Assembly: GCA_002269645.1 (NCBI GenBank)
Contig: NIVC01000645.1
Coordinates: 1 to 64,000 of the forward strand
Direction: 5' to 3'
Origin: Macrostomum lignano
Lineage: Eukaryota
Length of the DNA stretch: 64,000 nucleotides
Shown here: positions 1 to 58,579 of the stretch, piece by piece
How the letters are laid out: every line of letters begins with the position of its first letter
Position numbering within the stretch: the stretch's first letter is position 1
Notes under the pieces: model-generated
Databases searched by the model: none
Told to the model about the DNA's origin: nothing
What the model saw: the letters and a program-made list of their open reading frames with translations, nothing else
Position numbers and translations under genes: made by a program

Positions 1-2125
1 CGATGTGATGTAATCTGATGTGACTGGCTTTGAATCTAATGAGACTGACTATCAATCTAATGAGACTGGCTATCAATCTAATGAGACTGGCTATCAATCT
101 AATGAGACTGGCTATCAATCTAATGAGACTGAGACTGGCTATCCTAATGCTGGCTATCATCTAATGAGACTGGCTATCAATCTAATGAGACTGGCTATCA
201 ATCTAATGAGACTGGCTATCAATCTAATGAGACTGGCTATCAATCTAATGAGACTGGCTATCAAAATCTAATGAGACTGGCTATCAATCTAATGAGACTG
301 GCTATCAATCTAATGAGACTGGCTATCAATCTAATGAGACTGGCTATCAATCTAATGAGACTGGCTATCAATCTAATGAGACTGGCTATCAATCTAATGA
401 GACTGGCTATCAATCTAATGAGACTGGCTATCAATCTAATGAGACTGGCTATCAATCTAATGAGACTGGCTATCAATCTAATGAGACTGGCTATCAATCT
501 AATGAGACTGGCTATCAATCTAATGAGACTGGTATCAATCTAATGAGACTGGCTATCAATCTAATGAGACTGGCTATCAATCTAATGAGACTGGCTATCA
601 ATCTAATGAGACTGGCTATCAATCTAATGAGACTGGCTATCAATCTAATGAGACTGGCTATCAATCTAATGAGACTGGCTATCAATCTAATGAGACTGCT
701 ATCAATCTAATGAGACTGGCTATCAATCTAATGAGACTGGCTATCAAACTAATGTAATGAGACTGGCTATCAATCTATCTAATGAACTGGCTATCAATCT
801 AATGAGACTGGCTATCAATCTAATGAGACTGGCTATCAATCTAATGAGACTGGCTATCAATCTAATGAGACTGGCTATCAATCTAATGAGACTGGCTATC
901 AATCTAATGAGACTGGCTATCAATCTAATGAGACTGGCTATCAATCTAATGAGACTGGCTATCAATCTAATGAGACTGGCTATCAATCTAATGAGACTGG
1001 CTATCAATCTAATGAGACTGGCTATCAATCTAATGAGACTGGCTATCAATCTAATGAGACTGGCTATCAAACTAATGTAATGAGACTGGCTATCAATCTT
1101 ATCTAATGAAACTGGCTATCAAACTAATGTAATGAGACTGGCTATCAATCTTATCTAATGAAACTGGCTATCAAACTAATGTAATGAGACTGGCTATCAA
1201 TCTTATCTCATGAGACTGGCTATCAATCTAATGAGACTGGCTATCAATCTAATGAGACTGGCTATCAATCTAATGAGACTGGCTATCAATCTAATGAGAC
1301 TGGCTATCAATCTAATGAGACTGGCTATGAATCTAATGAGACTGGCTATCAATCTAATGAGACTGGCTATCAATCTAATGAGACTGGCTATCAATCTAAT
1401 GAGACTGACTATCAATCTAATGAGACTGGCTATCAATCTAATGAGACTGGCTATCAATCTAATGAGACTGACTATCAATCTAATGAGACTGGCTATCAAT
1501 CTAATGAGACTGGCTATCAATCTAATGAGACTAGCTATCAATCCTATCTAATGAGACTGGCTATCAATCTTATCTAATGAGACTGGCTATCAATCTTATC
1601 TAATAAGACTGGCTATCAATCTTATCTAATGAGACTGGCTATCAATCTAATGAGACTGGCTATCAATCTAATGAGACTGGCTATCAATCTTATCTAATGA
1701 GACTGGCTATCAATCTTATCTAATGAGACTGGCTATCAATCTTATGTAATGAGACTGGCTATCAATCTAATGAGACTGGCTATCAATCTAATGAGACTGG
1801 CTATCAATCTAATGAGACTGAGACTGGCTATCAATCTAATGAGACTGGCTATCAATCTAATGAGACTGGCTATCAATCTAATGAGACTGGCTATCAATCT
1901 AATGAGACTGGCTATCAATCTAATGAGACTGGCTATCAATCTAATGAGACTGGCTATCAATCTAATGAGACTGGCTATCAATCTAATGAGACTGGCTATC
2001 AATCTAATGAGACTGGCTATCAATCTAATGAGACTGGCTATCAATCTAATGAGACTGGCTATCAATCTAATGAGAATGACTATCAATCTAATGAGAATGG
2101 CTATCAATCTAATGAGACTGGCTAT
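1..2125. repeat. 21-bp minisatellite (CTAATGAGACTGGCTATCAAT)n with 26-bp variants; same family as the SDHA intron-2 array
   Basis: Direct tandem repeat visible; runs off the left end of the window; ends in the same unique junction (GGCTATTCGAATAAT) as the array at 11020-11950. Confidence 0.97.
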
Positions 2126-2230
2126 TCGAATAATTATCGAGCGCAACTCGTCTGGCCCTGCCAGTTGGTGGGCACGCATGTCGTAGTGCACAGTGGGCAG
2201 CACAGGGATTGGCTCCAGGGTCAGGTCCAC
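2126..2230 (-). pseudogene. Duplicated dead fragment of SDHA exon-2 3' end plus intron-2 junction
   Basis: Aligns by eye to about 11946-12060 ([16 protein letters not shown].. versus [16 protein letters not shown]); carries a 5-bp deletion and the donor CAG|GCGAGT is mutated to CAG|ACGAGT. Confidence 0.9.
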
Positions 2231-2238
2231 TATACTGC

Positions 2239-2245
2239 TATAAAT
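2239..2245 (+). promoter_or_regulatory. Candidate TATA box (TATAAAT) of the repeat-exon gene
   Basis: TATAAAT about 150 bp upstream of ATG 2391; motif and position only. Confidence 0.4.
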
Positions 2246-2390
2246 ATACTGCCGCCCCAGTCCGCGAGCTTCTCCGATTTCCAGACACACGCTTGTCAAG
2301 CTTGCTGTGGAGAATATTGTGCAAGTTCGCACTTTGTCGCTGAACAATCAACAACCGCAGGCTATTCTTTTTATTTGGTCAAGCAAGAGA

Positions 2391-5300
2391 ATGCCGCTGA
2401 AGGGCAGAGCAGCTGCAGTGAGCAGCTTGTTGCTGCTCGTTTTGCTTCTGGTTGGCACTCGCTGCCAAGCCAGACCAGTTCCAGGATCAGGTGAGTATAA
2501 GCAGGCTTGGCTTGACTGACTACTCTATGTAGCAAACAGAGTAACTAATATTGTGCTTGCATAGCAACACTTGATTACCGTACACTCGAAGGACCTCCTT
2601 TGAAACCCGCAACATTACAGAGTCTGATGATGACCACGAGGAACTTTTTCCAGAAGAGGAAGAAGAGGAAGAAGAAGAAGAGCCTTCTACAGGTGAAGAA
2701 GGTGACGAGAGGCATGGAGGAGGAAGTGTCGTTACAGCAAGAAGTGAGTAACGGGTTTTCCACTGCTTAGCTCGTACTATTAAAGATGAAACTGGGTACT
2801 CTGTCCTAATAACAGCGGAATAATTGAAACGCTTCAGTTCTGCAACAGCTCAAAACCAGCCGAGATGAAACCTCAAAAGACTTCCTAAAAGGTAAATGCA
2901 ACAAATATGTCACAAAAAACAACCATTCAACACGCTCGAAGCGCCATTTATAGGCTGAAAGAAAAGCGCAAAACTACATTCAAAACGCAAAGGTTATGTA
3001 AGGCCACTAATCTAATGGGACATGGCGACATTTCTGACACACTTTAGCATGAAATTGATCAAGAAGTTTGACTGTTTCAGAGAAGAACAAGAAGAGGATG
3101 ATTGTAGGCGGCTCCGAGAGCTCCCTGCCGCCTCAGTTTAGAAGTGAGTATCAGCGCCATGACTCACAATGGCGACATTTCTGACACACTTTAGCATGAA
3201 ATTGATCAAGAAGTTTGACTGTTTCAGAGAAGAACAAGAAGAGGATGATTGTAGGCGGCTCCGAGAGCTCCCTGCCGCCTCAGTTCAGAAGTGAGTATCA
3301 GCGCCATGACTCACAATGGCGACATTTCTGACACACTTTAGCATGAAATTGATCAAGAAGTTTGACTGTTTCAGAGAAGAACAAGAAAAGGATGATTGTA
3401 GGCGGCTCCGAGAGCTCCCTGCCGCCTCAGTTTAGAAGTGAGTATCAGCGCCACGACTCACAATGGCGACATTTCTGACACACTTTAGCATGCAATTGTT
3501 CAAGAAGTTTGACTGTTTCAGAGAAGAACAAGAAGAGGATGATTGTAGGCGGCTCCGAGAGCTCCCTGCCGCCTCAGTTCAGAAGTGAGTATCAGCGCCA
3601 TGACTCACAATGGCGACATTTCTGACACACTTTAGCATGAAATTGATCAAGAAGTTTGACTGTTTCAGAGAAGAACAAGAAAAGGATGATTGTAGGCGGC
3701 TCCGAGAGCTCCCTGCCGCCTCAGTTTAGAAGTGAGTATCAGCGCCACGACTCACAATGGCGACATTTCTGACACACTTTAGCATGCAATTGATCAAGAA
3801 GTTTGACTGTTTCAGAGAAGAACAAGAAGAGGATGATTGTAGGCGACTCCGAGAGCTCCCTGCCGCCTCAGTTCAGAAGTGAGTATCAGCGCCCATGACT
3901 CACAATGGCGACATTTCTGACACACTTTAGCATGCAATTGATCAAGAAGTTTGACTGTTTCAGAGAAGAACAAGAAGAGGATGATTGTAGGCGGCTCCGA
4001 GAGCTCCCTGCCGCCTCAGTTTAGAAGTGAGTATCAGCGCCATGACTCACAATGGCGACATTTCTGACACACTTTAGCATGAAATTGATCAAGAAGTTTG
4101 ACTGTTTCAGAGAAGAACAAGAAGAGGATGATTGTAGGCGGCTCCGAGAGCTCCCTACCGCCTCAGTTCAGAAGTGAGTATCAGCGCCATGACTCACAAT
4201 GGCGACATTTCTGACACACTTTAGCATGAAATTGATCAAGAAGTTTGACTGTTTCAGAGAAGAACAAGAAGAGGATGATTGTAGGCGGCTCCGAGAGCTC
4301 CCTACCGCCTCAGTTCAGAAGTGAGTATCAGCGCCATGACTCACAATGGCGACATTTCTGACACACTTTAGCATGAAATTGATCAAGAAGTTTGACTGTT
4401 TCAGAGAAGAATAAGAAAGGATGATTGTAGGCGGCTCCGAGAGCTCCCTGCCGCCTCAGTTTAGAAGTGAGTATCAGCGCCATGACTCACAATGGCGACA
4501 TTTCTGACACACTTTAGCATGCAATTGTTCAAGAAGTTTGACTGTTTCAGAGAAGAACAAGAAGAGGATGATTGTAGGCGACTCCGAGAGCTCCCTGCCG
4601 CCTCAGTTCAGAAGTGAGTATCAGCGCCATGACTCACAATGGCGACATTTCTGACACACTTTAGCATGCAATTGATCAAGAAGTTTGACTGTTTCAGAGA
4701 AGAACAAGAAGAGGATGATTGTAGGCGGCTCCGAGAGCTCCCTGCCGCCTCAGTTTAGAAGTGAGTATCAGCGCCATGACTCACAATGGCGACATTTCTG
4801 ACACACTTTAGCATGAAATTGATCAAGAAGTTTGACTGTTTCAGAGAAGAACAAGAAGAGGATGATTGTAGGCGGCTCCGAGAGCTCCCTACCGCCTCAG
4901 TTCAGAAGTGAGTATCAGCGCCATGACTCACAATGGCGACATTTCTGACACACTTTAGCATGAAATTGATCAACAAGTTTGACTGTTTCAGAGAAGAACA
5001 AGAAGAGGATGATTGTAGGCGGCTCCGAGAGCTCCCTACCGCCTCAGTTCAGAAGTGAGTATCAGCGCCATGACTCACAATGGCGACATTTCTGACACAC
5101 TTTAGCATGAAATTGATCAAGAATTTTGACTGTTTCAGAGAAGAACAAGAAGAGGATGATTGTAGGCGGCTCCGAGAGCTCCCTACCGCCTCAGTTTAGA
5201 AGTGAGTATCAGCGCCCATGACTCACAATGGCGACATTTCTGACACACTTTAGCATGAAATTGATCAAGAAGTTTGACTGTTTCAGAGAAGAACAAGAAA

Positions 5301-6642
5301 AGGATGATTGTAGGCGGCTCCGAGAGCTCCCTGCCGCCTCAGTTTAGAAGTGAGTATCAGCGCCATGACTCACAATGGCGACATTTCTGACACACTTTAG
5401 CATGAAATTGATCAACAAGTTTGACTGTTTCAGAGAAGAACAAGAAGAGGATGATTGTAGGCGGCTCCGAGAGCTCCCTGCCGCCTCAGTTCAGAAGTGA
5501 GTATCAGCGCCACGACTCACAATGGCGACATTTCTGACACACTTTAGCATGAAATTGATCAAGAAGTTTGACTGTTTCAGAGAAGAACAAGAAAGGATGA
5601 TTGTAGGCGGCTCCGAGAGCTCCCTACCGCCTCAGTTTAGAAGTGAGTATCAGCGCCATGACTCACAATGGCGACATTTCTGACACACTTTAGCATGAAA
5701 TTGATTAAGAAGTTTGACTGTTTCAGAGAAGAACAAGAAGAGGATGATTGTAGGCGGCTCCGAGAGCTCCCTGCCGCCTCAGTTTAGAAGTGAGTATCAG
5801 CGCCACGACTCACAATGGCGACATTTCTGACACACTTTAGCATGAAATTTATCAAGAAGTTTGACTGTTTCAGAGAAGAACAAGAAGAGGATGATTGTAG
5901 GCGGCTCCGAGAGCTCCCTGCCGCCTCAGTTCAGAAGTAAGTATCAGCGCCATGACTCACAATGGCGACATTTCTGACACACTTTAGCATGAAATTGATC
6001 AAGAAGTTTGACTGTTTCAGAGAAGAACAAGAAGAGGATGATTGTAGGCGGCTCCGAGAGCTCCCTAACGCCTCAGTTTAGAAGTGAGTATCAGCGCCAT
6101 GACTCACAATGGCGACATTTCTGACACACTTTAGCATGAAATTGATCAACAAGTTTGACTGTTTCAGAGAAGAACAAGAAGAGGATGATTGTAGGCGGCT
6201 CCGAGAGCTCCCTGCCGCCTCAGTTTAGAAGTGAGTATCAGCGCCATGACTCACAATGGCGACATTCTGACACACTTTAGCATGCAATTGTTCAAGAAGT
6301 TTGACTGTTTCAGAGAAGAACAAGAAGAGGATGATTGTAGGCGGCTCCGAGAGCTCCCTACCGCCTCAGTTCAGGAGTGAGTATCAGCGCCATGACTCAC
6401 AATGGCGACATTTCTGACACACTTTAGCATGCAATTGTTCAAGAAGTTTGACTGTTTCAGAGAAGAACAAGAAGAGGATGATTGTAGGCGGCTCCGAGAG
6501 AAACGAATCAAATAAGAAGAAAAAAGTTCAAGTACACAAGGCCGGCGGAAATGGTGAGAAAAAGTCCGGCGGGAGAGGTGCCAAAAAGCAGCATCTGAAG
6601 GGACCTAGCAAAGGAAAGCCGCAGGGCAAGCATCAGCCTTAA
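2391..6642 (+). CDS. Putative secreted repetitive precursor protein with about 27 exons: signal-peptide exon 2391-2490, exon 2 (2565 or 2621)-2743, exon 3 (2838 or 2849)-2891, 23 tandem 63-nt exons starting 3081..6314, terminal exon 6461-6642
   Basis: Exon 1 reads MPLKGRAAAVSSLLLLVLLLVGTRCQARPVPGS (hydrophobic signal-like) followed by GTGAGT. Every 147-bp unit has TGTTTCAG|63 nt|GT(G/A)AGT. Only phase 1 is open in all variants and it is continuous with the Lys/Gly-rich terminal exon ending TAA at 6642. Confidence 0.75.
3020..6500 (+). repeat. 147-bp tandem repeat, about 24 copies, each one exon (63 nt) plus one intron (84 nt)
   Basis: Exon starts read at 3081, 3228, 3375, 3522, 3669, 3816, 3964, 4111, 4258, 4405, 4551, 4698, 4845, 4992, 5139, 5287, 5434, 5581, 5727, 5874, 6021, 6168, 6314 and 6461. 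Confidence 0.97.
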
Positions 6643-7956
6643 GGTAGGTAGGCCCTATGGAATTACATTTATGTGTGAGTGTTAAAAACATTTTGAATCT
6701 GATTTTAAAGCGAAACTACTAACTGATGAAGGGCCCGGAGAGACAGGTCATAACAAGGGACTTGTTTATTTATTAGCATTTTAGAAATACTTCGTGCATG
6801 CTGACCCTTTCTACTCTTTTCTTTCAGGTGCCGACGGTTAAAGTCAGAATTTAATTCTGCGAGGCTGATGATGCGAAACATGACCAGACAAACTATGACA
6901 ATTATTTTTCCTTGATTCGGTAAAAGTGAACAAACGTTTCTTTTTTCTCCCCGATAATTCGCACCCAGTCGCTTTTTGGAAGCGCAGCCTTCAACGTAAC
7001 TATTATGCGATGGAGGAAGGAAATAAATTAAGCCAGAACTCAATAACGAACCCTTTCGATTCTTAAAGTGTGGCAGTGGTTATTCAAGCAAATTTCCAAA
7101 AAATGATTAATTGTTTGTGCTTTTTTATTTCAGGAAACGAAACTAATCGGATTTCATAATTGACAATTTCCAACTCTTGACAAAGCTTTACGCCAAGAGT
7201 ACATGTATTTTTGAAGGGCTTTTCATGTACATCAGCACTCTGTGTATGTTCTGTTTCAGATTTAGCGATTACCGCATTAATGAGATGAAAGATTTCAATG
7301 CATTTTTGTTAGTTTGGCTAGCCTTTAACCTGCCTAGCTGTCTGAGGAACCTGTCACAAGCGTACCAATCGAGGCTATGCGTGTGCTGTTTGTTGTTGTT
7401 AAACGGGGTGCTAGCGGGGATCAGCCCAAGTGACGTTGGCTCCACCGCTTGAACAGGCAACGTCAAGATTGAATCCCTTCAGTGGGGATCGGAGCCGTTG
7501 AAAGATTTGGAAACTCCTGCAGGATTTGTTGTCCTCACTGCAAAGGCTCATAATTACGAATATTTTCACGGCTTGGCTCTGCTAATCCAAGCTCTGCAGT
7601 GGACCCGCAATCTCGGCCAGACACAAGTGAAATTTAACTATCCATCAGGCAGGGTCGAACGTGAGCGGACGACACAAAGAGCGAGATCAATGGCGCCATC
7701 CGCGGGCACTTGGTCCAGCTCCAGCAAACAGGTGCATGAGAGCCTAGCCTACACATATGCTTTACGGCAATATATCACATGTATTTACATGTATATTATT
7801 ACATGTAAGGGCAACTATGAGGATATAGTTAACCCACAGACTGCAGCCTGAATTGCCGCACTCATCTCGCAAAAGTACACGGGGTGTCTGGAGTTCTGAC
7901 ACTTAAACCCAGAGCAAAAAGGGGGCTTTGGTGTCATTTTGAAGCGGCGCATTCTT

Positions 7957-8317
7957 TATTATTATTAGAGGCAGGGGGTTGTGTGCACCCTGGCGCACTT
8001 TAAGCGACATAGGCACACAACCGGCGAGAGGCATTACTGCCCATTCCGCCGACTCCCCTGAGCAGGCATACAAGCGCGCGGATACGTACGCAGGCAGACA
8101 CTCACACAGGAGTGTACAGCGGCCCTAACTTTATTTTATCGTTAGGTATGTACACTTCACTGCGCCTTGGGGGGTTGGCTCTCAAGGCCGTTAATTGCAC
8201 GAGCAGAGCCAAGCCGAGATTCTAATTCAGACCCAAATTAATGCGACTGCACTTGGAATCGAGCCTGGGTCGCTGGCACACCAGAGCCTGCGCTAGACCG
8301 CTGGGCTACGGCCCCCC
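7957..8317 (-). mobile_element. tRNA-derived SINE family A, full copy with 13-bp TSD
   Basis: Minus-strand 5' end GGGGGGCCGTAGCCCAGCGG (A box) ... GGCTCGATTCC (B-box-like); (TAA)n tail; TSD GCGGCGCATTCTT at 7944-7956 and 8318-8330; second copy at 38905. Confidence 0.85.
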
Positions 8318-8449
8318 GCGGCGCATTCTTCCTAGTATATTAAATCTCGCATATTTTGATCATTTCATTCAAAATTTGCTTTATAAAGCATCGCAATGTC
8401 ACTGATAGTCTAGCGAAATTGACAACCTACATAGAAAGTGATGGTTTGC

Positions 8450-9400
8450 CTCTCATGGATAAACCTTCTTAACATAGTCGTCACATGTAGCAACTCGCTT
8501 CTTCCACCGCTTGAGCATGGATGGCGTCAGTCGCATCAAAATAGCTTTGGCTCGAAAGACCTTGGGAAAGAATTCACCGGACCTTGTCTTAAAACGGCTC
8601 TTCAGCTGCAGAAAAATAAAGAAATCGGCAGGCTCCAGATCCGTTGAGTGTAGATTTTGAAAATTGCCTCAAAGTGGTGGTTTAAAAATCATCTACGGGT
8701 TTGCTTTTTGGTTTGATAGCGGCCTACGTTGGTTCACAGACAGTTTCGATCTAGTGCAGTAAATCATGCCGTTTACCTGATGGGCAAGTTCACGTTTATC
8801 TTGTAGTCGTATTACATCAAGGTGCAAAATGCGCTGCACAATGACGCATCCATCGGAAACGACACAAGAAACATTGGAAATGAAGTTTGTAAGTTGTTTT
8901 TTTTAAGCAAACCCCTCACTGTTTTTGAGCACAATTCTTCGCAAAGCAACCGTTTAAGCTGTAATTTCCGGCTCAGCTGGACCAAGAGTGGCAATTCTAT
9001 TCTCCCATAACTCCTTTTTCCCAGCCTTCTCCGACTGTAGCTTAGCCAGGGATAGCATTCAATTGCCAGCCAGCAGACCATGCAAAACAATGAAACCTTC
9101 GAGGTCATTCTGTCTGGCAAGCTGCGAGCTACCTTGAGCGACTCTTCGAGGTCGTTCTGTCTGGAAAGTAATAACATGCGAGGACATACTGGAGTTTGAA
9201 AAAATTAATATCTTAACTTTCAGCGTCTACTAAAGGAGCTTAGAATAAGTAAACAAGAGCGTTTGTCTTCTTTCTGCCCCTGCCTCTCGGTCTGCCAGTC
9301 TGTCTTCTGTATGCTTCGCATTGGAAGGCTCAAGTCATAAAGTGAGGGAGGTCCAATGTCTTGAAGAATACAAAATCGATGCTTTGAGACAAGAGACGGT
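8450..9400 (-). mobile_element. Degenerate mariner (Tc1/mariner) transposase relic, central and C-terminal part
   Basis: Minus-strand translation gives LHSTDLEPADFFIFLQLK (cf. mariner YSPDLAPxDFxLF) and MLKRWKKRVATCDDYVKK (cf. RWxKCVxxxGDYFEK); many stops and frameshifts; no TIR seen. Confidence 0.55.
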
Positions 9401-10075: not shown

Positions 10076-13000
10076 TCAATAAGCCCGAATCTTCGGCGGC
10101 ACTGTCGGGCAGTCCTTCTGGTCGAGGGTCTTGTCAATGACCGGCCGGTACTTGAGCGTCACCTTGCCGGTGGCCTCGTCCATGAAGCACAGCGTGTGCT
10201 TGCGCCAGTGCTGCTCGAACGGCCGCTTGGTCTGGCCATCGGTCGGCTTGGTGTAGTCGAACTCGTCGATTCGATCTTTGAAGTCTTCGCGGGCGTGGGC
10301 GCCGCGCGACTCATTGCGGGCCTCGGCAGCGTACACAGTCTGCGTTGAGAGGGCGGGAGCGGCTGGGTTTCACGGTTGAGATTAGATTTAATTGCGGGGG
10401 GGGCAGGTAAGATTGGAGATAAAAGGTGCGATGATATTTAGGGGTGACATAAGAGTCGAAAGATGAAACCTGGATGCGAAGTCTGAGAAGACTAAGAGAT
10501 TCTAAGGGAAGGAGAAGGGCTCACCTGTCCAGCATTGAGCATCAGATTCTGCAGCTCCAGCGTCTCAACCAGATCGGAGTTCCAAATCAGGCTGCGGTCG
10601 GTGACCTTCAGATCGGCCATCCGTTTGTAGATTGCGTCGAACTCCTGGCAGCCGCGCTTCAGGGTGGGGCCGTCGCGGAACACGGCGGCGTTGCTCTGCA
10701 TGGCCTTCTGCAGGTCCAGCCGCAGCTGCGCCGTTGGGGTGTCGCCTTTGGCGTTGCGCAGCCGGTCGATGTTGGCTACGGAGGCCTCACCGGAGTCGGA
10801 GCGGAGAGGCGCCTGCTTCTCCCCAGGCCGGTTCTCCTTGGCGATGGTGTGCGCGCAGGCGCGGCCGAACACGACCAGATCCAGCAGAGAGTTGGCGCCG
10901 AGGCGGTTGGCGCCGTGCACCGACACGCAGGCGGCCTCGCCAGCGGCGTACAGGCCGGGGATCACCACGTCGGAGCCTTTCTGGGCATCGTAGGTGATGG
11001 CCTGCGGGAGGGGGACAGGAGACTGGCTATGAATCTAATGAGACTGGCTATGAATCTAATGAGACTGCCTTTCAATCTAATGAGACTGGCTATCAATCTA
11101 ATGAGACTGGTTATCAATCTAATGAGACTGGCTATCAATCTAATGAGACTGGTTATCAGTCTAATGAGACTGGCTATCAATCTAATGAGACTGGCTATCA
11201 ATCTAATGAGACTGGCTATCAATCTAATGAGACTGGCTATCAATCTAATGAGACTGGCTATCAATCTAATGAGACTGGCTATCAATCTAATGAGACTGGC
11301 TATAAATCTTATCTAATGAGACTGGCTATCAATCTTATCTAATGAGACTGGCTATCAATCTTATCTAATGAGACTGGCTATCATTCTTATCTAATGAGAC
11401 TGGCTATCAATCTTATCTAATGAGACTGGCTATCGATCTTATCTAATGAGACTGGCTATCAATCTTATCTAATGAGACTGGCTATCAATCTTATCTAATG
11501 AGACTGACTATCAATCTTATCTAATGAGACTGGCTATCAATCTTATCTAATGAGACTGGCTATCAATCTTATCTAATGAGACTGGCTATCGATCTTATCT
11601 AATGAGACTGACTATCAATCTTATCTAATGAGACTGGCTATCAATCTTATCTAATGAGACTGGCTATCAATCTTATCTAATGAGACTGGCTATCAATCTA
11701 ACGAGACTGGCTATCAATCTAATGAGACTGGCTATCAGTCTAATGAGATTGGCTATCAATCTAATGAGACTGGCTATAAATCAAATGAGACTGGCTATCA
11801 ATCTAATGAGACTGGCTATCAATCTAATGAGACTGGCTATCAATCTAATGAGACTGGCTATCAATCTCATGAGACTGGCTATCAATATTATCTAATGAGA
11901 CTGACTATCAATCTAATGAGACTGGCTATCAATCTAATGAGACTGGCTATTCGAATAATCATGGGGCGCAACTCGCCTGGCCCTGCCAGTTGGTGGGCAC
12001 GCCGCCCATGTTGTAGTGCACAGTGGGCAGCACAGGGATTGGCTCCCGGGTCACGTCCACCCCGGCAAAGATGTGAGCGGTCTCGGAGATGCCCGGCAGG
12101 CGGCTGCGCAGCTGTTCAGGCGGCAGGTGGTGCAGCTGCAGGAAGATGTGGTCCTTGTCCTTGCCAACTCCGCGGCCCTCGCGAATCTCGATGGTCATGG
12201 CGCGAGACACCACGTCGCGGCTGGCCAAGTCTTTGGCAACAGGAGCGTAGCGCTCCATGAACCTTTCGCCCTCGCTATTAACCAAGTAGCCGCCTTCGCC
12301 GCGGCAGCCCTCGGTGATGAGGCAGCCAGCTCCATAGATGCCAGTAGGATGGAACTGGACAAATTCCATGTCCTGGTTGGGCAGGCCAGCGCGGCTGACC
12401 ATGGCAGTGCCATCGCCAGTGCAGGTGTGCGCTGAGGTGCACGAGAAGTAGCACCGACCATAGCCTCTGCGGTTCAGGTGGAAGTGAATGACTGCTTTGT
12501 CTTAGGAGTACAAGTTTTCATTCCAACTGAACCTTATATTTAACAATTTCCTACTTATATATCTGATAGTAGTCTGAAGTGAGTATTAAGTCAGTTAAAT
12601 TTAGCAGCTTCACCCTCCATTGTTAAGAAGAAAAAAGCATGAAATTAAGTTTTAAAAGCAACCTATAGCTAGCTAATTCTTTGCTACAGGCACTTAGTGC
12701 ACTAGATTGATGAGCCTTAGTGAACCAATCAATTTAATTTTTTATTAGATAAGATTGCCATCTATAAAAATACCCCTTGGCAATAAACTAAGTAATGAAA
12801 TAATAAAAATCTAACAATTAGTAGCAAACCTAGTTTTAATGAGTCTATAGTAAAAAGTAAATAATATTTAAAAAAATAATATTGACTGATTTATTGAGAT
12901 TTTAGTTATAAAAAGCATAAGCTATCAGAGTTACATTAGAGCAAATAGAAAATAAACTAAGGATTGACCAACTATGATTTTTTCATGCGTGATTGGAACT

Positions 13001-14290
13001 AGACCATGTGTGAAACCATGTGTGACTATGATTTTTTTTACATTTTATTTGAACACAGAACTATGTTTTAATATTACTGTCTAAAAATTTTTATTGATTT
13101 TTAAGATTTTTATGATTGTAAGTTATGAAAGATTGGGAAAGAATTCAATCAAAACAATGTTTATATATGCAAGCAATAAAGTTCACAAGTTCATAGTTTA
13201 TAAGTAAGAAGCTATTACATTATCTTTATTATAAATTAAAATTGATTAAAATCATTTGCTTATATAACTATTAATTATATACTTAATTATAAAGAATCTA
13301 GACCATATATTTCTAGTTTTAGTTAGTCTAGATTTGCTAATTATAAGAAAAATAAAATATTTATTATTCAATGTTACATATATGATATTTTAATATTTTT
13401 ATAAATTATTGTAAATATCTATTAATTAAACTTTTTAAATACTTAATAACTTTATATAGGCCTAATTTGGTTTCAAAGCTAAGAGAAGGCCAAAAAATTC
13501 GAAACTTTTACTGTGTATAAGCCAAAGGTCAAATTCCAAAGTCAAGTCAAACGTAATAAACAATAATGACTAGTATCAATACTCACCCAGTAGCCAAAAC
13601 AGTATTCTTTGATTGAAACCTATGAATTGTGCCATCTTCCAAATTCAAGGCAATGACACCTTTGCAGATTCCATCTTCATAGATAATGTCCAGAGCAAAA
13701 TACTCAACAAAATAGTCGCAGCCATACTTCAATGACCTGCCATACAAGGTATGCAACATTGAATGTCCAGTTCGATCTGCCACTGCACAGCAACGATGGG
13801 CCTGGCCTCCTTGGCCATAGTTGATGCTCTGACCACCAAAAGCACGCTGGTAAATCCGGCCATTTTCTAAACGACTAAATGGCATACCATAGTTTTCCAG
13901 CTCGATCACAGCCTTGGGCGCCTGCTCGCACATGTAGTGAATAGCATCTTGGTCACCTAGCCAGTCAGAACCCTTCACCGTATCATACATGTGGAATCGC
14001 CAGTCATCAGCCTCCATGTTTCCCAGTGCGGCATTGATTCCACCCTGCGCTGCAACAGTATGGGATCGAGTAGGAAACAGCTTTGTTACGCATGCTGTCT
14101 TGAATCCTTCATTAGCGAGTCCGAAAGCAGCACGCAAACCAGCGCCACCAGCTCCAACGACTACAGCATCATAGACATGGTCAATGACAGGATATTGCGA
14201 TGTTATTGAACTGGTAGTTGCATTGCGATGCAAGCGCTGGTTAAAACCAACGATATTTCTCAGTCTTAAAATTCGCCCTAATTTTAACAT
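10076..14290 (-). CDS. SDHA: Succinate dehydrogenase flavoprotein subunit, mitochondrial precursor; exons 14290-13587, 12466-11977, 11001-10525, 10339-10076; 644 aa
   Basis: FAD-binding VVVGAGGAG, covalent FAD-His motif [44 protein letters not shown]. Exon lengths 704+490+477+264=1935 nt join in frame with AG acceptors and GT/GC donors. Confidence 0.97.
11020..11950. repeat. 21/26-bp minisatellite filling SDHA intron 2
   Basis: Tandem ATGAGACTGGCTATCAATCT(TATCT)A occupies nearly all of intron 11002-11976. Confidence 0.97.
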
Positions 14291-15309
14291 TTTCTACTTG
14301 ATAGGCGTATTGCCAATAAAAGTACACAACCTGTTTTAGAATAACGAAAACCAAGTAATTTTTGAAGGGCAAATGTGTGTACGGTAAAAATAAACCTATT
14401 TCAAAATATAGTCAAACTTTAATTTAAACGTAAAAGTGACTTTAAAAAAAATTAAGAACATAATATTACCACCTAACTGTTCTTCGTTATACAAACACTG
14501 AATTTTTTAGCCTATTAGTATTAATGCTTAGTTATACTGAAAACTTGCCGAGTTTATACTTTTCAGAGGGAAATAAGAAAAACAATTAATATTAAAAAAT
14601 AACAATTTTTTAGTTTCTAGGAGCTAGTTTCCAGTCAATGCAGCTCTGAATCAGTCACTTCTAGAGCTGATGTGTAAATTAGTATCAATTCAAAAAACTT
14701 TCCAGGACGGAGACGCAAATCTGGCGGAGAACGCTCATCGAAAATCAGCTAACATACCCAACCCTGAAGTGAGTATTCCTTCACTTCAACCCTCTCGATT
14801 GGGACCAGACCCTGAAAAGCATCTTGAGGCCTAATTTATTAAGACTACAGCTAATACAAGCATAAAGACAAGACGACTAAATACTAAAGGACTACAAAAA
14901 TAGAAGGATGCAATTACACTCAAAATCTATGGAAATTGTAATTGACGGCCACTTTTCTAAACAATGTCACTTTTGAATGGATGCACGTGGAAATTTCTTT
15001 TTTTCGCTGAGACCTTCGAAATTTATTCCCCTTTAAGATAAAATAGCATTCGCGGATTTGGCTTAACTTTTTTTAAATTTCACTTTTCTTAAGGCAACCC
15101 ATTTATTCATCAACAAATATATATGCCTTTACTATCTAAAACTAGTTACGAGCCTTAAACTCCATTTCTAACTCTTCGAAGGGTTTAATTAGCCGTGTAG
15201 AATGTTTAAACAATATAACGAAATTTAAATTGAAAATCGGTAGTATCCAGCAAAATATTTATCTAAAGTGGCCTTCAAAACTTTTTTCCGTGAAAAGTGA
15301 GTGTCGCGT

Positions 15310-25045: not shown

Positions 25046-28000
25046 TGTAGTGACTCAGACAAAATCGGAGGGTTTGCGAGTGCACGAAGAATCTTAGAAA
25101 TGGGCCGACTTGCCCTGCAAGTATATTTATATATGTGAAGAGTAAGTGCGCGTGAGTCTTACGTAATACATTGCAACACGTGACTAATAATATTTGCGCG
25201 CCAATATTGTACGCTCGTACATCGCACTGAACTACACTACATCTCTCCTCAAATACGGCTTAAAAGCAAACTTTTAAAGTTGGGTTTAAAAAATCTGTTT
25301 TTGTTAAATTTCATTCTGTTACAAATTTAGCAAAAGTCCAGCAAAAAATACAAAAAATCAGATGCTACCGTTTAACAAAAACCTTTTTCAAGCCTTGTAG
25401 TTCACGTTCACCTTCGCCGCCCGGGGATGTGGCCGCAACGCAATGGGCGAGGCCGCTCGCTCGCCTGCGGCTGGCTGCGGCGGAGGCGCATTCACTTCCG
25501 GTTGCGGCATCGCTGCCAGCTCGCCCAGATTGTCAGGCTCGGACTCCGGTGCCACTCGCTTTAGGTCGGTGCAGTGCCGCCTGCAAACTCTGGCACCCTG
25601 TCGTATCGTCGCCGAGTCCGCCTTGATCTCCTCGATGAGCCAGGGGTCCCACTCGAACGGCGTGTCTCCCTTGAGCGGATTCAGTCGCCGCCGCAGCACT
25701 GTGTCGCCAACCTTGAGCTTGTGCGGTCTCGCCAGTCGCTTCCGGTCTGTGTAGAGCTTGCCTTGCGCCTTTCGAAGTGCGTCGCGCTGCCGAAGCTGCC
25801 GGTCTGCGATGGCCACCGGTCTCGACGGTCTGACCGACGGGATGGAGTCGTTCAGCACGCGACCCATGAGGAGCTCGGCAGGCGCCCGTCCAGTTGTTCG
25901 CTGAGGCGTGCACCGATAGGCCAGCAGCCACTCGTCAAGGGCCGCTCTCCAGTCGCGCTTCTGTGCGATCGCAGCGCGCACCACCTTGTTGATGGAACGA
26001 TTCAAACGCTCGGTGGCGCCGTTGGCCTGTGGATGTAACGGTGTGATGAGGCGCTGCCGAATTCCGTAGCTGTCCAGGAAGCTCTTGAACTGGGCTGAAG
26101 AGAACGGTGGGCCGTTGTCAGTAACTAACGTTTGAGGGATTCCAAACCGGACGAATGAACTCCTCAGTCGAGGGATTAGCGCCTCAGCCGTCGTGGTCTG
26201 GACAACCTCCACCTCGGGAATCGGGAGTATTGATCGACGCAGACTAGCAGCATGCTGCCTTGAATGGGTCCTAGCAGATCCGCCCCGAGCGTCAGCCAGG
26301 CCGCCTTCGGGATGGGCGTCGGCTTTAGCGGTGATGCAGTCACGTCAGCGGCATGCGAGGTCGCCAGGCAGGCCCGGCACGTGGCTATGAAGCGCTCCGT
26401 CTCCAGTTGCATCCTTGGCCACCAGACCTTGGTGTTCAGCCGGTCCAGCGTCTTACGTGTGCACTGGTGCCCCCGGTGCGCTAGATCCAGTACAAGCCGT
26501 CGGAGCGCCACCGGGACGATGATCCGCTGGCCCCGTAGGAGCACCCCGTCCACTGCCGACAGTTCGTGACGCAGCGCATGCAGCGACCGCAGTTCTGCTG
26601 ACTCCAGGCTCCACCGCCCTGTCTCTAAGGCGCGAATCGCCGCTTGAATTGTTGCGTCCTTTTGCGAGCTGTTCTGTACGCTGGTCAGTGACAGCGCATT
26701 TAGTACGGCCGCCTGTACAACAGCGGCGATGGAAAGTGCATCCAGCTCTTCGCCCACATTCGGTGCGGGTGTCGGCAGTGGCTGTCGGCTGAGCACGTCT
26801 GCCGGGTTGAGCGGGCCCGGCTGGTACTCGACTGTGAATTTCATATGCTGAATGCGCAATGCCATCCTTTCGATTCTCGGAGGGGGTCTCGAACTGCTGC
26901 CGAACAGAGCAACCAGTGGCTTGTGGTCGGTTTGCACCGTGAACATCGGCGCGCCGTGGAGGTAGAATTGAAACTTTAAACAGCCGAACTTCACGGCCAA
27001 CGCCTCTTTCTCTGTTTGGGAATAGCGTTGCTCAACGTTCGACAGTGTCCGGCTAGCGTATGCAATGGGCCGCCTGGTTCCGTCCGATTGTGTCTGTGAC
27101 AGGATTGCACCCAGCCCCGCTGGCCCAGCGTCGACAATGAGTTGCGTCGGAAGGCGATGGTTGAAAAAGGCAAGAGAGCCACTTGACGCGATTTGAGATT
27201 TGATGTCGCTGAAGGCTTGTCTTTCCAGATCGGCCCATGCCCAGGGCTGGCCCTTCCTTGTCAGGTTGCGCAGCGGCTTTGCCAGGTCCGCCAGCCTCGG
27301 GGTGAATGCGGCCAGGTAGTTGACAAGTCCCAAGAACGAGCGCACCTCCGTGACATTCGTTGGCTCTGCAAATGCATTAACTGCCTCTAGCTTTGACTCG
27401 GTTGGCCTGACTCCGTCCTTCGACAATCGCATCCCCATGAAGGTGACTTGCGTTCGTGCCAGCTTGCACTTGGCCGGGTTGAGCGTCAGTCCGTGCTGCG
27501 CCAGCCGCTGGAGGCACTCCCGCAGATTGTTGTGATGCTCCGCCACGCTGTGGCCATAGACAATAATGTCATCGTGGATCCATTTTACTTTTGAAAGTCC
27601 AGCCAGCACGGATGACATAACAGCTTGAAGAATTTCCTGCGCCGTTGATAGCCCCATGCAGAGTCTCGTCAGCCGCCGAAGACCTCGAGGCGTTGAAAAA
27701 GTTAGAAGATGCCGGCACTCCTCTGACACAGGGATTTGATAGAATGCTTTTGCGACGTCCAACTCTGAGAACAGCGTCGCTCCTGCCATGTCGCCTGTTA
27801 CCTCCTCAAAGGTCGGTATTGGGTGTCGCTCCCTGACGACAGACTTGTTTAGCTCCCTCAGATCCTGAGTGATCCTGATCTCGCCAGGAGCTTCTTTGGG
27901 GACGACGACGATACGAGAAACCCACGGGCAGGGTCCCTCCACTGGCTCAATGATGCCTTGTTCTTCTAGGTACTGGAGCTCGGCGTCCACTGCTGGAGCG

Positions 28001-33486: not shown

Positions 33487-34050
33487 AGGTTTAGGTTAGG
33501 GTGTTAGGGTTTAGGTTAGGGTGTTTGGGTTTAGGTTAGGATGTCAAAGTTTAGCTTGGGGTGCTTAGGTTTAAGTTGAGGGTGTTAGATCTAGGTTAGG
33601 GTGTTTAGGTTTAGTTTAGGGCGTTTGGGTTTAGGTTAGGGTGTTTGGATTTAGGTTAGGGTGTTTGGGTTTAGGTTAGAGTGTTTGGGTTTAGGTTAGG
33701 GTGTTTGGATTTAGGTTAGGGTGTTTGGATTTAGGTTAGGGTGTTTGGGTTTAGGCTAGGGTGTTTGGGTTTAGGTTAGGGTGTTTGGGTTTAGGTTAGA
33801 GTGTTTGGGTTTAGGTTAGAGTGTTTGGGTTTAGGTTAGAGTGTTTGGGTTTAGGCTAGGGTGTTTGGGTTTAGGTTAGGGTGTTTGGGTTTAGGTTAGA
33901 GTGTTTGGGTTTAGGTTAGGGTGTTTGGATTTAGGTTAGGGTGTTTGGGTTTAGGTTAGGGTGTTTGGGTTTAAGGTAGGGTGTTAGGGTGTTAGGTTAG
34001 GGTTGTAGAATTTAGGTTAAGGGTGTCAGGGTTTAGGTGAGGGTTAGGTT
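33487..34050. repeat. Interstitial telomere-like 20-bp minisatellite (TTTAGGTTAGGGTGTTTGGG)n
   Basis: 20-bp periodicity; the unit contains TTAGGG and a TTTAGG variant. Confidence 0.9.
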
Positions 34051-36450: not shown

Positions 36451-36534
36451 TCCGGGAAGCCAGTGCCCGAAAGCTACAGCATACAGCTGGAATGTGAAGC
36501 GCTCACACGCCATTATCACACCGTTTTCAGAGCC

Positions 36535-54015: not shown

Positions 54016-55650
<1,635 letters not shown>

Positions 55651-57304: not shown

Positions 57305-58579
<1,275 letters not shown>

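What the first reader, a model, noticed from the sequence alone, without database searches (positions are those of the whole stretch)
2391..6642. Hidden gene: a 147-bp satellite is a tandem array of symmetric 63-nt exons encoding a repeated-peptide secreted precursor
Seen: each unit is TGTTTCAG|AGAAGAACAAGAAGAGGATG...CAGTT(T/C)AGAA|GTGAGT, a 63-nt exon and an 84-nt intron, with 23 full copies plus a terminal exon. Phase 0 hits TGA, phase 2 hits TAG in the TTT variants, and phase 1 is open. Spliced units read KKNKKRMIVGGSESSLPPQFR. Exonic variation is mostly synonymous (AAG/AAA, CTG/CTA, TTT/TTC, AAC/AAT, AGA/AGG) against two replacement types (G>D in units 6 and 11, P>T in unit 21). The donor variant in unit 20 is GTAAGT, still canonical. 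Upstream is a signal-peptide-like exon and downstream a Lys/Gly-rich tail with a stop. Established: prohormone convertases cut at KR/RR/KK sites and neuropeptide precursors often carry many peptide copies, usually within large exons. Inference: either a precursor releasing about 23 copies of non-amidated MIVGGSESSLPPQF, or an uncleaved cationic secreted protein (adhesive, seminal or antimicrobial). One peptide per exon would let splicing or unequal crossover set peptide dose. I do not recognise the peptide.
Basis: partly seen in the sequence, partly recalled or inferred. Interest (0 to 1): 0.88.

Follow-up and report, generated by a model that had tools for sequence, protein, structure and literature searches.

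The report
Flatworm gene built from satellite-like exons
A 147-base "satellite" in the flatworm Macrostomum lignano is really the core of a gene: 23 near-identical tiny exons, each with its own intron, that together encode a secreted, very basic protein repeating one 21-residue unit, probably cut into many copies of a 14-residue peptide of unknown function.

Summary
The array is real: TRF finds 3022-6500, period 147, 23.7 copies. Each unit is a 63-nt phase-1 exon plus an 84-nt GT..AG intron. It follows a TATA box, a signal-peptide exon and two more phase-1 exons, and ends in a terminal exon with a stop at 6640-6642.

The genome is Macrostomum lignano Mlig_3_7. A paralogue 20 kb upstream of sister copies is already in UniProt as fragmentary predicted proteins. 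My hand-built splice model reproduces them exactly, including one exon-to-exon junction inside the array.

Coding is supported:
- 194 of 227 exons encode the same 21-mer.
- 150 of 169 variant copies are synonymous in the claimed frame only.
- Multi-base exon indels are multiples of 3, while introns carry a 2-nt indel.
- Old diverged paralogue exons keep IVGGSESSL.PQFR through synonymous changes.

These are 1-nt homopolymer deletions that differ between near-identical copies, so they are probably PacBio consensus errors.

Function is unresolved. A convertase-cleaved polyprotein is my preferred reading and an uncleaved polycation is the rival. The kind is known (iterated exon-intron modules, multi-copy precursors); this combination is a new variant.

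The parts
2239..2246 (+). TATA box (TATAAATA) of the core promoter
   Evidence: Read directly. Homology between this gene and the paralogue begins about 10 nt upstream of this box and runs through the 5'UTR (alignment).
2391..2490 (+). Exon 1 (coding part), MPLKGRAAAVSSLLLLVLLLVGTRCQA|RPVPGS: signal peptide, ends in phase 1, donor GTGAGT
   Evidence: It is 93% identical to the paralogue's exon 1, against 82-84% for the flanking intron and upstream DNA. The 7 differences are 4 synonymous and 3 replacement, with none in the hydrophobic core.
2621..2743 (+). Exon 2, 123 nt, phase 1-1, acidic pro-region (ten consecutive Glu)
   Evidence: (acceptor TTACAG, donor GTGAGT) and the translation. The homologous 90-nt exon is used in P0001.
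2838..2891 (+). Exon 3, 54 nt, phase 1-1 (LQQLKTSRDETSKDFLK)
   Evidence: The homologous 63-nt exon is used in P0001.
3022..6500 (+). 147-bp tandem array: 23 units of a 63-nt exon (first 3081-3143, last 6314-6376) plus an 84-nt intron. Each exon encodes KKNKKRMIVGGSESSLPPQFR in phase 1.
   Evidence: TRF, unit table, translation, variant spectrum.
4405..4466 (+). Unit 10 exon, 62 nt: 1-nt deletion in an A run that breaks the frame
   Evidence: The sister copy on C827 has the intact 63-nt exon with AAAA at the same unit.
5581..5642 (+). Unit 18 exon, 62 nt: 1-nt deletion in an A run that breaks the frame
   Evidence: The sister copy on C827 has AAAA here but a different 1-nt deletion (CC to C) in the same exon.
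6461..6642 (+). Terminal coding exon: a truncated repeat (KKNKKRMIVGGSE) followed by a Lys/Gly-rich tail and stop TAA at 6640-6642
   Evidence: The reading frame is intact in 5 of 6 genomic copies. Differences among copies are 3 synonymous and 1 replacement.
7022..7027 (+). AATAAA, the only poly(A) signal-like hexamer within 750 nt after the stop

Best explanation
The 147-bp array is the repetitive core of a protein-coding gene of the flatworm Macrostomum lignano.

Gene structure. Transcription starts downstream of a TATA box at 2239. Splicing joins a signal-peptide exon, two short pro-region exons, 23 near-identical 63-nt exons (each separated by an 84-nt intron) and a terminal exon. Every internal exon is a multiple of 3 in phase 1-1. 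The product is a secreted, disordered, very basic protein: about 635 aa if all 23 units are intact, pI about 11.3. It consists of an acidic pro-piece, 23 copies of KKNKKR-MIVGGSESSLPPQF-R and a Lys/Gly-rich tail.

Evolution. The whole exon-plus-intron module evolves in concert by unequal crossing-over, which changes the number of units (11-39 in other copies of the locus).

Inferred mechanism. Subtilisin-like proprotein convertases cut after the KKR and RKK clusters in the secretory pathway. A carboxypeptidase then trims the basic residues. The basic linker is consumed and about 23 copies of the 14-residue, non-amidated peptide MIVGGSESSLPPQF (1449 Da) are released per precursor.

The two 62-nt exons in the window are most likely long-read consensus errors rather than real frameshifts.

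What is shown and what is inferred:
- Shown: the exon-intron anatomy, the frame, the family and the purifying-selection signature.
- Inferred: secretion, cleavage and the identity of the active product. The biological role of the peptide is not known.
For: Anatomy:
- The unit structure and the phase are consistent from exon 1 to the stop.

Independent gene models:
- A spliced N-terminal query hits the M. lignano UniProt entries P0001 and P0002 and their cluster members P0006-P0008.
- My hand-built splice model of the paralogue on C827 reproduces P0001 residues 33-207 letter for letter, including the junction ...SSLPPQFR|KKNKKRMIVGG between two array exons.
- The introns validated in this way are 62-142 nt with GT..AG ends, like the array introns.

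Frame-specific constraint:
- 211 of 227 exons are 63 nt long, and 194 of 227 encode the same 21-mer.
- In phase 1, 10 of 19 variant types and 150 of 169 variant copies are synonymous. The other two frames give 2/19 and 5/19.
- All multi-base exon length variants are multiples of 3 (-3 in 5 units, +6 in 3 units), whereas 74 introns carry a 2-nt deletion.
- Older diverged exons at C827:313581-313667 and C827:316737-316820 have unalignable introns. They still keep IVGGSESSL[PA]PQFR, with ATT>ATC, GTA>GTG and TCC>TCT.
- Terminal-exon differences are 3 synonymous to 1 replacement. Exon 1 differences are 4 to 3.

Frameshifts as errors:
- All the 1-nt deletions lie in homopolymer runs.
- They differ between the near-identical C645 and C827 copies at units 10 and 18.
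- They are as frequent per base in exons as in introns.
- The C827 copy has five such deletions within its 182-nt terminal exon.
- The assembly is PacBio/Canu polished with short reads (PMC5730564).

Precursor reading:
- The product has a signal peptide and an acidic pro-piece of net charge -17.
- The linker consists only of basic residues plus one Asn, arranged as two multibasic sites.
- AlphaFold gives no fold for the repeats, and Pfam and PDB give no domain.
Against: - No RNA or peptide data could be examined. The UniProt models may be partly ab initio: P0008 reads through the TATA box.
- No model of the window's own gene type was found in the protein databases.
- As assembled, the window copy stops after nine repeats.
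- The 1-nt deletions at units 19 and 21 are shared by contigs C3555 and C644, so some frameshifts may be real.
- The peptide has no C-terminal Gly for amidation.
- In the older paralogue exons the KR directly before IVGG is replaced by ISKAPQV. The cleavage site itself is therefore less conserved than the peptide core and the KKN.K cluster.
- Within arrays, exons are no more conserved than introns (97-99% each). Identity alone says nothing here.
Confidence: 0.55

Rival explanations
1. Same gene and same splicing, but the product is not cut. It acts as a whole as a secreted polycation: 23 BBXBBB-type basic clusters spaced by 15 neutral residues, net charge about +115. In that form it would be a structural or adhesive component, for example a cohesive or mucus, secretory-granule, eggshell or seminal matrix protein. 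It would bind polyanions such as sulfated glycans, with the poly-Glu pro-piece acting as an internal counter-ion.
For: - The composition is pI 11.3 with 26% Lys+Arg, and the repeats are predicted disordered.
- M. lignano is known to use an extremely Lys/Arg-rich repetitive secreted protein, Mlig-ap1, as a cohesive glue component that interacts with negatively charged sugars (PMC6410801).
- The basic cluster at the start of every exon is the most widely conserved feature across old paralogue exons, while the KR|M site is not.
- There is no amidation signal.
Against: - The neutral 14-mer is under sequence-specific constraint: high-frequency variants are all synonymous and IVGGSESSL.PQF is kept in old paralogues. 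Purely compositional structural repeats usually tolerate more change.
- The linker looks like two back-to-back multibasic convertase sites.
- It is not Mlig-ap1 or Mlig-ap2: it lacks their lectin, vWD, EGF and TSP domains and their repeat sequence.
Confidence: 0.3
2. The window copy is a decaying, non-functional duplicate of a functional gene elsewhere in this recently polyploid genome. On this reading its two frameshifts are real, and its transcript would be truncated after nine repeats or removed by nonsense-mediated decay.
For: - Two 62-nt exons are present in the window.
- The locus exists in at least five copies.
- 5'-truncated arrays fused directly to a 21-bp minisatellite exist on C800, so partial dead copies do occur.
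- The frameshifts at units 19 and 21 are shared by C3555 and C644.
Against: - The promoter, exons 1-3 and introns 1-3 are 100% identical to those of the sister copies.
- All splice sites are intact.
- The terminal exon is intact.
- The deletions are single bases in homopolymers and are discordant between near-identical copies. They occur at the same rate in introns.
Confidence: 0.1
3. A non-coding 147-bp satellite whose open frame and splice-like motifs are accidental and are simply propagated by array homogenisation.
For: - The unit length equals a nucleosome core.
- Exons and introns are equally homogenised.
- The genome is about 15% tandem repeat (PMC5730564), and the window alone holds dozens of minisatellites.
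Against: - The frame of the array matches the phase handed on by three upstream exons and runs into a terminal exon with a stop.
- Annotated spliced protein models exist for the paralogue.
- The frame-specific synonymous bias and the multiples-of-3 exon indels argue for coding.
- Diverged single-copy exons of the same design with unrelated introns exist elsewhere in the locus.
- The array is confined to one locus family on five contigs rather than dispersed.
Confidence: 0.03

Closest known systems
Spider silk genes with iterated exon plus homogenised-intron modules (flagelliform spidroin; Argiope MaSp2)
   Same: Introns delimit each repeat unit of a secreted repetitive protein. Introns within a gene are about as similar to each other as the exons are (97.6% on average in MaSp2, PMC9779670; 97-99% here). 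Whole modules are homogenised and change in number by unequal crossing-over.
   Different: There is no sequence relationship. The modules here are tiny (63 + 84 nt against hundreds of bases). The repeat here is one exact 21-mer with multibasic linkers, not Gly/Ala/Pro silk motifs. The host is a flatworm, not an arthropod.
Multi-copy peptide precursors cut by proprotein convertases (for example FMRFamide-type neuropeptide precursors, yeast alpha-factor, fungal Kex2-processed repeat proteins, insect apidaecin precursors; named from my own knowledge)
   Same: A signal peptide, an acidic pro-piece, and many identical peptide copies separated by Lys/Arg sites.
   Different: In those precursors the copies usually lie within one or a few large exons; here there is one copy per exon. 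There is no amidation Gly and no homology. Processing has not been shown.
Xenopus caerulein precursor genes
   Same: Each copy of a secreted skin peptide is encoded by its own small exon, so the number of copies can vary by exon duplication or skipping.
   Different: Those genes have a few copies, unrelated peptides and longer non-homogenised introns. They do not form a satellite-like array.
Schistosome micro-exon genes (MEGs)
   Same: A flatworm gene for a secreted protein, with a signal-peptide exon followed by short symmetric exons that can be skipped without breaking the frame. The MEG definition used here is exons of 3-81 bp, symmetrically placed (bioRxiv 10.1101/2023.06.21.545858).
   Different: MEG introns are long (up to 5 kb) and their exons are not tandem copies of each other. 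Here the introns are 62-189 nt and the exons are near-identical. There is no sequence similarity.
Mlig-ap1, the Lys/Arg-rich cohesive adhesion protein of M. lignano (PMC6410801)
   Same: Same species. Both are secreted, repetitive and extremely basic.
   Different: Mlig-ap1 is very large (its KR regions alone exceed 3,600 aa) and has C-type lectin, vWD, C8, TIL and EGF domains and a different repeat (SRKPRRKNRKSRKP). None of these features is present here.

Membership tests
Non-coding satellite or minisatellite DNA | Head-to-tail array of homogenised units | tested here: met
   TRF gives period 147, 23.7 copies and 97% matches.
Non-coding satellite or minisatellite DNA | No coding or splicing constraint on the unit | tested here: not met
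   There is a frame-specific synonymous bias. Exon indels are multiples of 3 while introns carry a 2-nt indel. Spliced protein models exist for the paralogue.
Convertase-processed multi-copy peptide precursor | N-terminal signal peptide | tested here: met
   By inspection only, since no SignalP was available. The n-region is MPLKGR, the h-region is 16 hydrophobic residues and the c-region is TRCQA|R. The h-region is conserved in the paralogue through synonymous changes and modelled as a helix. UniProt names P0002 'Secreted protein'.
Convertase-processed multi-copy peptide precursor | Repeated peptide copies, each flanked by di- or multibasic sites | tested here: met
   There are 23 copies of F-RKK-N-KKR-M. 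Across the genome, 194 of 227 units are identical at the protein level.
Convertase-processed multi-copy peptide precursor | Mature peptides detectable; expression in regulated-secretory cells | not testable with these tools
   No transcriptome, in situ or peptidome data could be reached. The peptide string is absent from the paper library.
Convertase-processed multi-copy peptide precursor | C-terminal Gly as amidation donor (common, not obligatory) | tested here: not met
   The peptide ends ...PPQF-R, with no Gly before the basic site.
Iterated exon plus homogenised-intron repeat genes (spidroin-type architecture) | An intron delimits every repeat unit, and introns within the gene are highly similar | tested here: met
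   There is one 84-nt intron per unit. Mean pairwise intron identity is 98.1% in the window. The comparison value is 97.6% in MaSp2 (PMC9779670).
Iterated exon plus homogenised-intron repeat genes (spidroin-type architecture) | Homology to spidroin terminal domains or repeats | tested here: not met
   No Pfam family is above its cut-off and there is no PDB relative.
Schistosome micro-exon genes | Secreted product; internal exons short and symmetric | tested here: met
   All internal exons are 54-123 nt, multiples of 3 and in phase 1-1. The array exons (63 nt) fall inside the 3-81 bp range quoted in bioRxiv 10.1101/2023.06.21.545858, but exon 2 (123 nt) does not.
Schistosome micro-exon genes | Long introns; membership of a MEG sequence family | tested here: not met
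   Introns are 62-189 nt. The only relatives found are M. lignano proteins.
Mlig-ap1 / Mlig-ap2 adhesion proteins | Lectin, vWD, TIL, EGF or TSP domains and their specific repeats | tested here: not met
   The Pfam scan is empty. The domain list and repeat of Mlig-ap1 and Mlig-ap2 come from PMC6410801.
Trypsin-like serine protease (because of R|IVGG) | Peptidase S1 domain following the IVGG N-terminus | tested here: not met
   There is no Trypsin family hit and no protease among the PDB hits even at E=10. The resemblance is limited to 4-6 residues.

The most novel reading that the evidence does not exclude
The locus is a peptide-dose device for a previously unknown flatworm signalling or secretory peptide family with the core IVGGSESSLPPQF. 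Each copy sits on its own skippable 63-nt exon inside a recombination-prone 147-bp module. The number of peptides per precursor would then be set on two time scales. Unequal crossing-over sets it between subgenomes and individuals (11-39 units observed). Exon skipping sets it within an animal. Because tandem-repeat masking removes such genes from annotations, more coding satellites of this kind may be hidden in the 15% of this genome that is tandem repeat.
Probability: 0.2. Interest if true: 0.75.

Novelty: new variant of a known kind. Interest (0 to 1): 0.5.

Why it matters
1. It shows concretely that a satellite-looking array can be a gene. The published M. lignano annotation masked tandem repeats with TRF and dropped transcripts that overlap repeat annotation (PMC5730564). 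Genes of this design are therefore systematically at risk of being lost, in a genome that is about 15% tandem repeat.

2. It defines a lineage-restricted secreted protein or peptide family in a genetically tractable flatworm. The family has at least two gene types, A and B, plus older diverged exons. RNAi, in situ hybridisation and transgenesis are available in this species, so function can be tested directly.

3. It is a compact natural system for studying concerted evolution of exon-intron modules and copy-number change between the subgenomes of a recent polyploid.

4. It is also a caution: 1-nt homopolymer errors in long-read assemblies of repeats can imitate pseudogenisation.

Tried and rejected
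- A full-length spliced product (593 aa) searched against 5.8 billion proteins found nothing. Annotated relatives are short fragments outside the length filter.
- A C-terminal query gave only the weak, diverged P0009.
P0001 was used instead and found only M. lignano proteins plus one Symbiodinium protein.
- An exact look-up of P0001 in assemblies found nothing on record.
- Comparing exon with intron identity within arrays as a coding test is uninformative, because both are 97-99% homogenised.
- The idea that IVGG marks a serine-protease-derived exon or a zymogen mimic has no Pfam or PDB support. It remains speculation only.
- Identity with the adhesive proteins Mlig-ap1 or Mlig-ap2 is rejected on domains and repeat sequence.
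- An RNA-family explanation is excluded: there are no Rfam hits in 1-9000.
- There is no long unspliced ORF on either strand of the array: nothing of 110 aa or more between 2494 and 6705.
- Literature searches for the peptide, for the UniProt accessions and for M. lignano neuropeptide, seminal-fluid and satellite work found no description of this gene.
- The Wasik 2015 genome paper is not held in the library. I therefore could not establish how the UniProt models were made.


Full report
**1. What is in the sequence**

Tandem Repeats Finder reports an array at 3022-6500 with period 147, 23.7 copies and 97% matches. A pattern search finds 23 units of TTTCAG | exon | GT[AG]AGT, with exon starts from 3081 to 6314 spaced 146-148 nt apart. 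A further exon at 6461 begins like the others and then diverges into a Lys/Gly-rich tail that ends at TAA 6640-6642.

Upstream lie these features:
- a TATA box at 2239-2246;
- an ATG at 2391;
- a 100-nt exon ending at 2490 before GTGAGT;
- an exon at 2621-2743 (123 nt);
- an exon at 2838-2891 (54 nt).

Exon 1 ends in phase 1 and every later exon is a multiple of 3, so a single frame runs from the ATG into the array and on to the stop.

One thing was missed. Units 10 (4405-4466) and 18 (5581-5642) are 62 nt, with AAGAAAAGG shortened to AAGAAAGG. If every exon is included, the frame breaks at unit 10 and a stop follows at once. Leaving out those two exons gives a 593-aa open product.

**2. Which organism and how many copies**

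The window's assembly has 764,410,778 bases in 5,269 contigs. The published Macrostomum lignano Mlig_3_7 assembly has 764,424,970 bases in 5,270 scaffolds, including a 14,192-base mitochondrial genome (PMC10468722). The difference is exactly that mitochondrial genome. The only protein relatives found are M. lignano entries. The organism is therefore this free-living flatworm, a recent hidden polyploid whose assembly holds 180-312 Mb of near-identical duplicated sequence (PMC5730564).

The 147-bp unit occurs at least 245 times, but only on contigs C645 (the window), C827, C800, C3555 and C644. After fetching these regions two gene types appear.

'Gene B' is the window's type. Exons 1-3 and their introns are 100% identical among copies.

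| Contig | Units |
|---|---|
| C645 (window) | 23 |
| C827 | 23 |
| C800 | 23 |
| C644 | 39 |
| C3555 | at least 27 (cut by the contig end) |

'Gene A' lies about 20 kb upstream of gene B on C827, C3555 and C800. It has a diverged 5' part and 37, 11 and 15 units respectively.

C800 also carries two 5'-truncated arrays, of 18 and 13 units, fused directly to a 21-bp minisatellite. Unit number therefore varies from 11 to 39 among copies of one locus, as expected from unequal crossing-over.

**3. Is it spliced and coding?**

*Independent gene models.* A spliced N-terminal query (exons 1-3 plus two repeats) hits UniProt A0A1I8IUW5 (P0001, E=2e-35) and A0A1I8FPF1 (P0002, named 'Secreted protein'). 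The cluster mates are P0006-P0008.
- I built a splice model of gene A on C827 by hand: exon 1, then exons of 90, 63, 57 and 87 nt, a 69-nt first array exon, then a 63-nt array exon. All have GT..AG borders and introns of 62-142 nt.
- Its translation equals P0001 residues 33-207 exactly, including the junction ...SSLPPQFR|KKNKKRMIVGG between two array exons.
- P0006 is the same protein without the 69-nt exon.
- These database models begin with translated 5'UTR, and P0008 even reads through the TATA box. I could not find out how they were made. They are therefore supporting evidence, not proof of transcription.

*Substitution spectrum.* Among 227 exons, 211 are 63 nt long, and 194 of the 227 encode the identical 21-mer KKNKKRMIVGGSESSLPPQFR.
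- Of 19 single-base variant types in the 63-nt exons, 10 are synonymous in phase 1, and they account for 150 of 169 variant copies.
- Only 21% of possible changes are synonymous (binomial p=0.0025; p=0.065 against a transitions-only expectation).
- In the other two frames only 2/19 and 5/19 types are synonymous (2 and 14 copies).
- Every variant that has spread widely (TTT/TTC, CTG/CTA, AAG/AAA, CAG/CAA) sits at a third codon position of the claimed frame.

*Length variation.* Multi-base exon length variants are -3 nt (five units, KKNKKR to KKNKR) and +6 nt (the first exon of gene A). Meanwhile 74 introns carry a 2-nt deletion, 82 against 84 nt.

*Old paralogue exons.* The weak hit P0009 led to exons at C827:313581-313667 and C827:316737-316820.
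- They are 78-nt phase-1 exons encoding KKNKKISKAPQVIVGGSESSL[PA]PQFR, with canonical splice sites and introns that do not align with the array introns or with each other.
- Against the array exon, the core IVGGSESSLPPQFR differs only by ATT>ATC, GTA>GTG and TCC>TCT, all synonymous.

*Flanking exons.*
- Exon 1 is 93% identical between genes A and B, against 82-84% for the adjacent intron and upstream DNA. The differences are four synonymous and three replacement, none in the hydrophobic core.
- The terminal exon differs among copies by three synonymous changes and one replacement.

*Negative controls.*
- There is no ORF of 110 aa or more on either strand inside the array.
- There is no Rfam family in 1-9000.
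- Identity within arrays is equal for exons and introns (97-99%). The whole module is homogenised, and identity alone is not evidence of coding.

I put the probability that this is a spliced protein-coding gene at about 0.9.

**4. The two frame-breaking exons**

- All eight frame-breaking exons in the family are 1-nt deletions in short homopolymers: AAAA to AAA, GG to G, CC to C.
- The window and C827 copies are otherwise almost identical, unit for unit. Yet at unit 10 C827 has the intact AAAA, and at unit 18 it has AAAA but a different deletion.
- One-base length deviations are as frequent per base in introns as in exons, about 6 per 10,000 bases (from the counts).
- The C827 copy has five homopolymer deletions within its 182-nt terminal exon, while five other copies are intact.
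- The assembly was made from PacBio reads with Canu and polished with short reads (PMC5730564). By inference, short reads cannot be placed uniquely in such an array.

I therefore read the window's frameshifts as probable consensus errors. The deletions at units 19 and 21 are shared by C3555 and C644. Some may therefore be real, or the two contigs may derive from the same reads.

**5. The product and how it probably works**

With all 23 units intact the conceptual protein is about 635 aa. It consists of:
- a signal peptide, MPLKGR + 16 hydrophobic residues + TRCQA|R;
- a 66-residue acidic pro-piece with ten consecutive Glu and net charge -17;
- 23 copies of KKNKKR-MIVGGSESSLPPQF-R;
- a basic tail.

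Overall pI is 11.3 and net charge about +115.

No Pfam family passes its cut-off. No solved structure is related. AlphaFold2 on P0001 gives mean pLDDT 56, with helices only for the signal peptide and a short pro-region segment, and no structure for the repeats (a single-sequence model, so weak evidence).

The linker between peptide cores is R-K-K-N-K-K-R, that is, two multibasic sites separated by one Asn. By established knowledge, subtilisin-like proprotein convertases cut after paired basic residues and carboxypeptidases trim the exposed basic residues. The simplest mechanism is therefore a polyprotein that yields about 23 copies of MIVGGSESSLPPQF (1449 Da, net charge about -1), or an RKKN-extended form.

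- For this reading: the sequence-specific conservation of the neutral 14-mer.
- Against it: there is no amidation Gly, and in the old paralogue exons the KR before IVGG is replaced, while the KKN.K cluster and the core are kept.

The rival is an uncleaved polycation acting as a structural or adhesive matrix protein. M. lignano does use an extremely Lys/Arg-rich cohesive protein, Mlig-ap1 (PMC6410801). This gene is not Mlig-ap1 or Mlig-ap2, because the domains and the repeat differ.

I give the cleaved precursor about 0.5-0.55 and the uncleaved protein about 0.3. The biological role is unknown in either case. No paper in the library mentions the peptide or the UniProt accessions.

**6. Comparison with what is known**

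- Repeat units delimited by introns that are themselves homogenised are documented in flagelliform and Argiope MaSp2 spidroin genes (PMC9779670).
- Multi-copy peptide precursors are classical. From memory, Xenopus caerulein genes place each peptide copy on its own small exon.
- Schistosome micro-exon genes share the flatworm lineage, the signal-peptide exon and the short symmetric skippable exons. They have long introns and non-repeated exons (bioRxiv 10.1101/2023.06.21.545858).

This locus combines these features in an extreme, compact form: one peptide per 63-nt exon, in a 147-bp module repeated up to 39 times. I class it as a new variant of a known kind, without sequence relatives outside M. 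lignano.

It is 'hidden' in a practical sense. The published annotation masked tandem repeats and excluded transcripts that overlap repeat annotation (PMC5730564). The window's gene type was not found in the protein databases searched.

**7. Verdict**

It is correct except for the two 62-nt exons.
- The structural interpretation is supported. The functional one remains open.
- Interest is moderate at 0.5. This is a clean, instructive case in a tractable model animal, but the principle is known and the function unknown.

Noticed in passing
window 12-2125 and 2130-2230; compare window 11019-12100: The 21-bp minisatellite (AATCTAATGAGACTGGCTATC) just upstream of the gene also sits in an intron of the neighbouring SDHA gene. 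The stretch between it and the TATA box carries, on the minus strand, a fragment of an SDHA exon ([13 protein letters not shown]...). It is 95% identical over 76 nt to 11925-12000. The gene's upstream region therefore looks like a duplicated piece of SDHA intron plus exon.
   Followed up: partly
window 10492-14293, minus strand: Exons of succinate dehydrogenase flavoprotein subunit (Pfam FAD_binding_2, E=4e-56 for 13583-14293). The gene lies tail-to-tail with the repeat gene.
   Followed up: partly
G000 C827:331565-331741 (sister copy of the terminal exon): Five 1-nt homopolymer deletions lie within 182 nt that are intact in five other copies, which points to poor local consensus quality in that contig. 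The same region of C827 also reads about 2.8 kb of N.
   Followed up: yes
G000 C800:~126250-128900 and ~133700-135650: Two 5'-truncated arrays of 18 and 13 units, each with a terminal exon and downstream sequence. Each is joined directly to the 21-bp minisatellite, 17 nt before the first exon, with no promoter or signal-peptide exon. They are either dead partial duplicates or assembly artefacts.
   Followed up: partly
G000 C827:313096-317700: A string of diverged, single-copy exons of the same design: a basic cluster, then ..GG[SD]ESS..PQ.., in phase 1. They lie between the gene A array and gene B and are partly represented by UniProt A0A1I8FQA5 (P0009). Gene A's array has no terminal exon of the gene B kind, so these exons may be its 3' part.
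   Followed up: partly
protein P0003 / P0004 (Symbiodinium natans CAE7229251): A dinoflagellate protein carries three tandem copies of M[VS]IGGD[ED]SSLPPEYR, strikingly like MIVGGSESSLPPQFR (phmmer E=4e-6 against 1.8 billion proteins). The rest of the protein is unrelated. Whether this is chance, convergence or a shared short motif is unresolved.
   Followed up: partly
window 25388-29607, minus strand: Ty3/gypsy-type LTR retrotransposon coding region: a 1143-aa ORF with RVT_1, RNase H and integrase zinc-binding domains, plus an adjacent 318-aa integrase-like ORF.
   Followed up: partly
window 54016-54492, minus strand: Intronless Mago nashi gene (Pfam E=3e-74), embedded between minisatellites.
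   Followed up: partly
window 36427-37677 (+), 57305-58579 (-) and 48400-48945 (-): Three further coding stretches: a single-exon rhodopsin-family GPCR-like ORF of 416 aa; a 424-aa ORF with a ricin-type lectin domain plus DUF3472; and an exon with an F5/8 type C (discoidin) domain.
   Followed up: partly
window 33488-34044: Degenerate telomere-like 20-bp minisatellite (GGTTTAGGTTAGGGTGTTTG) in an interstitial position. More generally the window holds dozens of separate minisatellite arrays, in line with the roughly 15% tandem-repeat content reported for this genome (PMC5730564).
   Followed up: no
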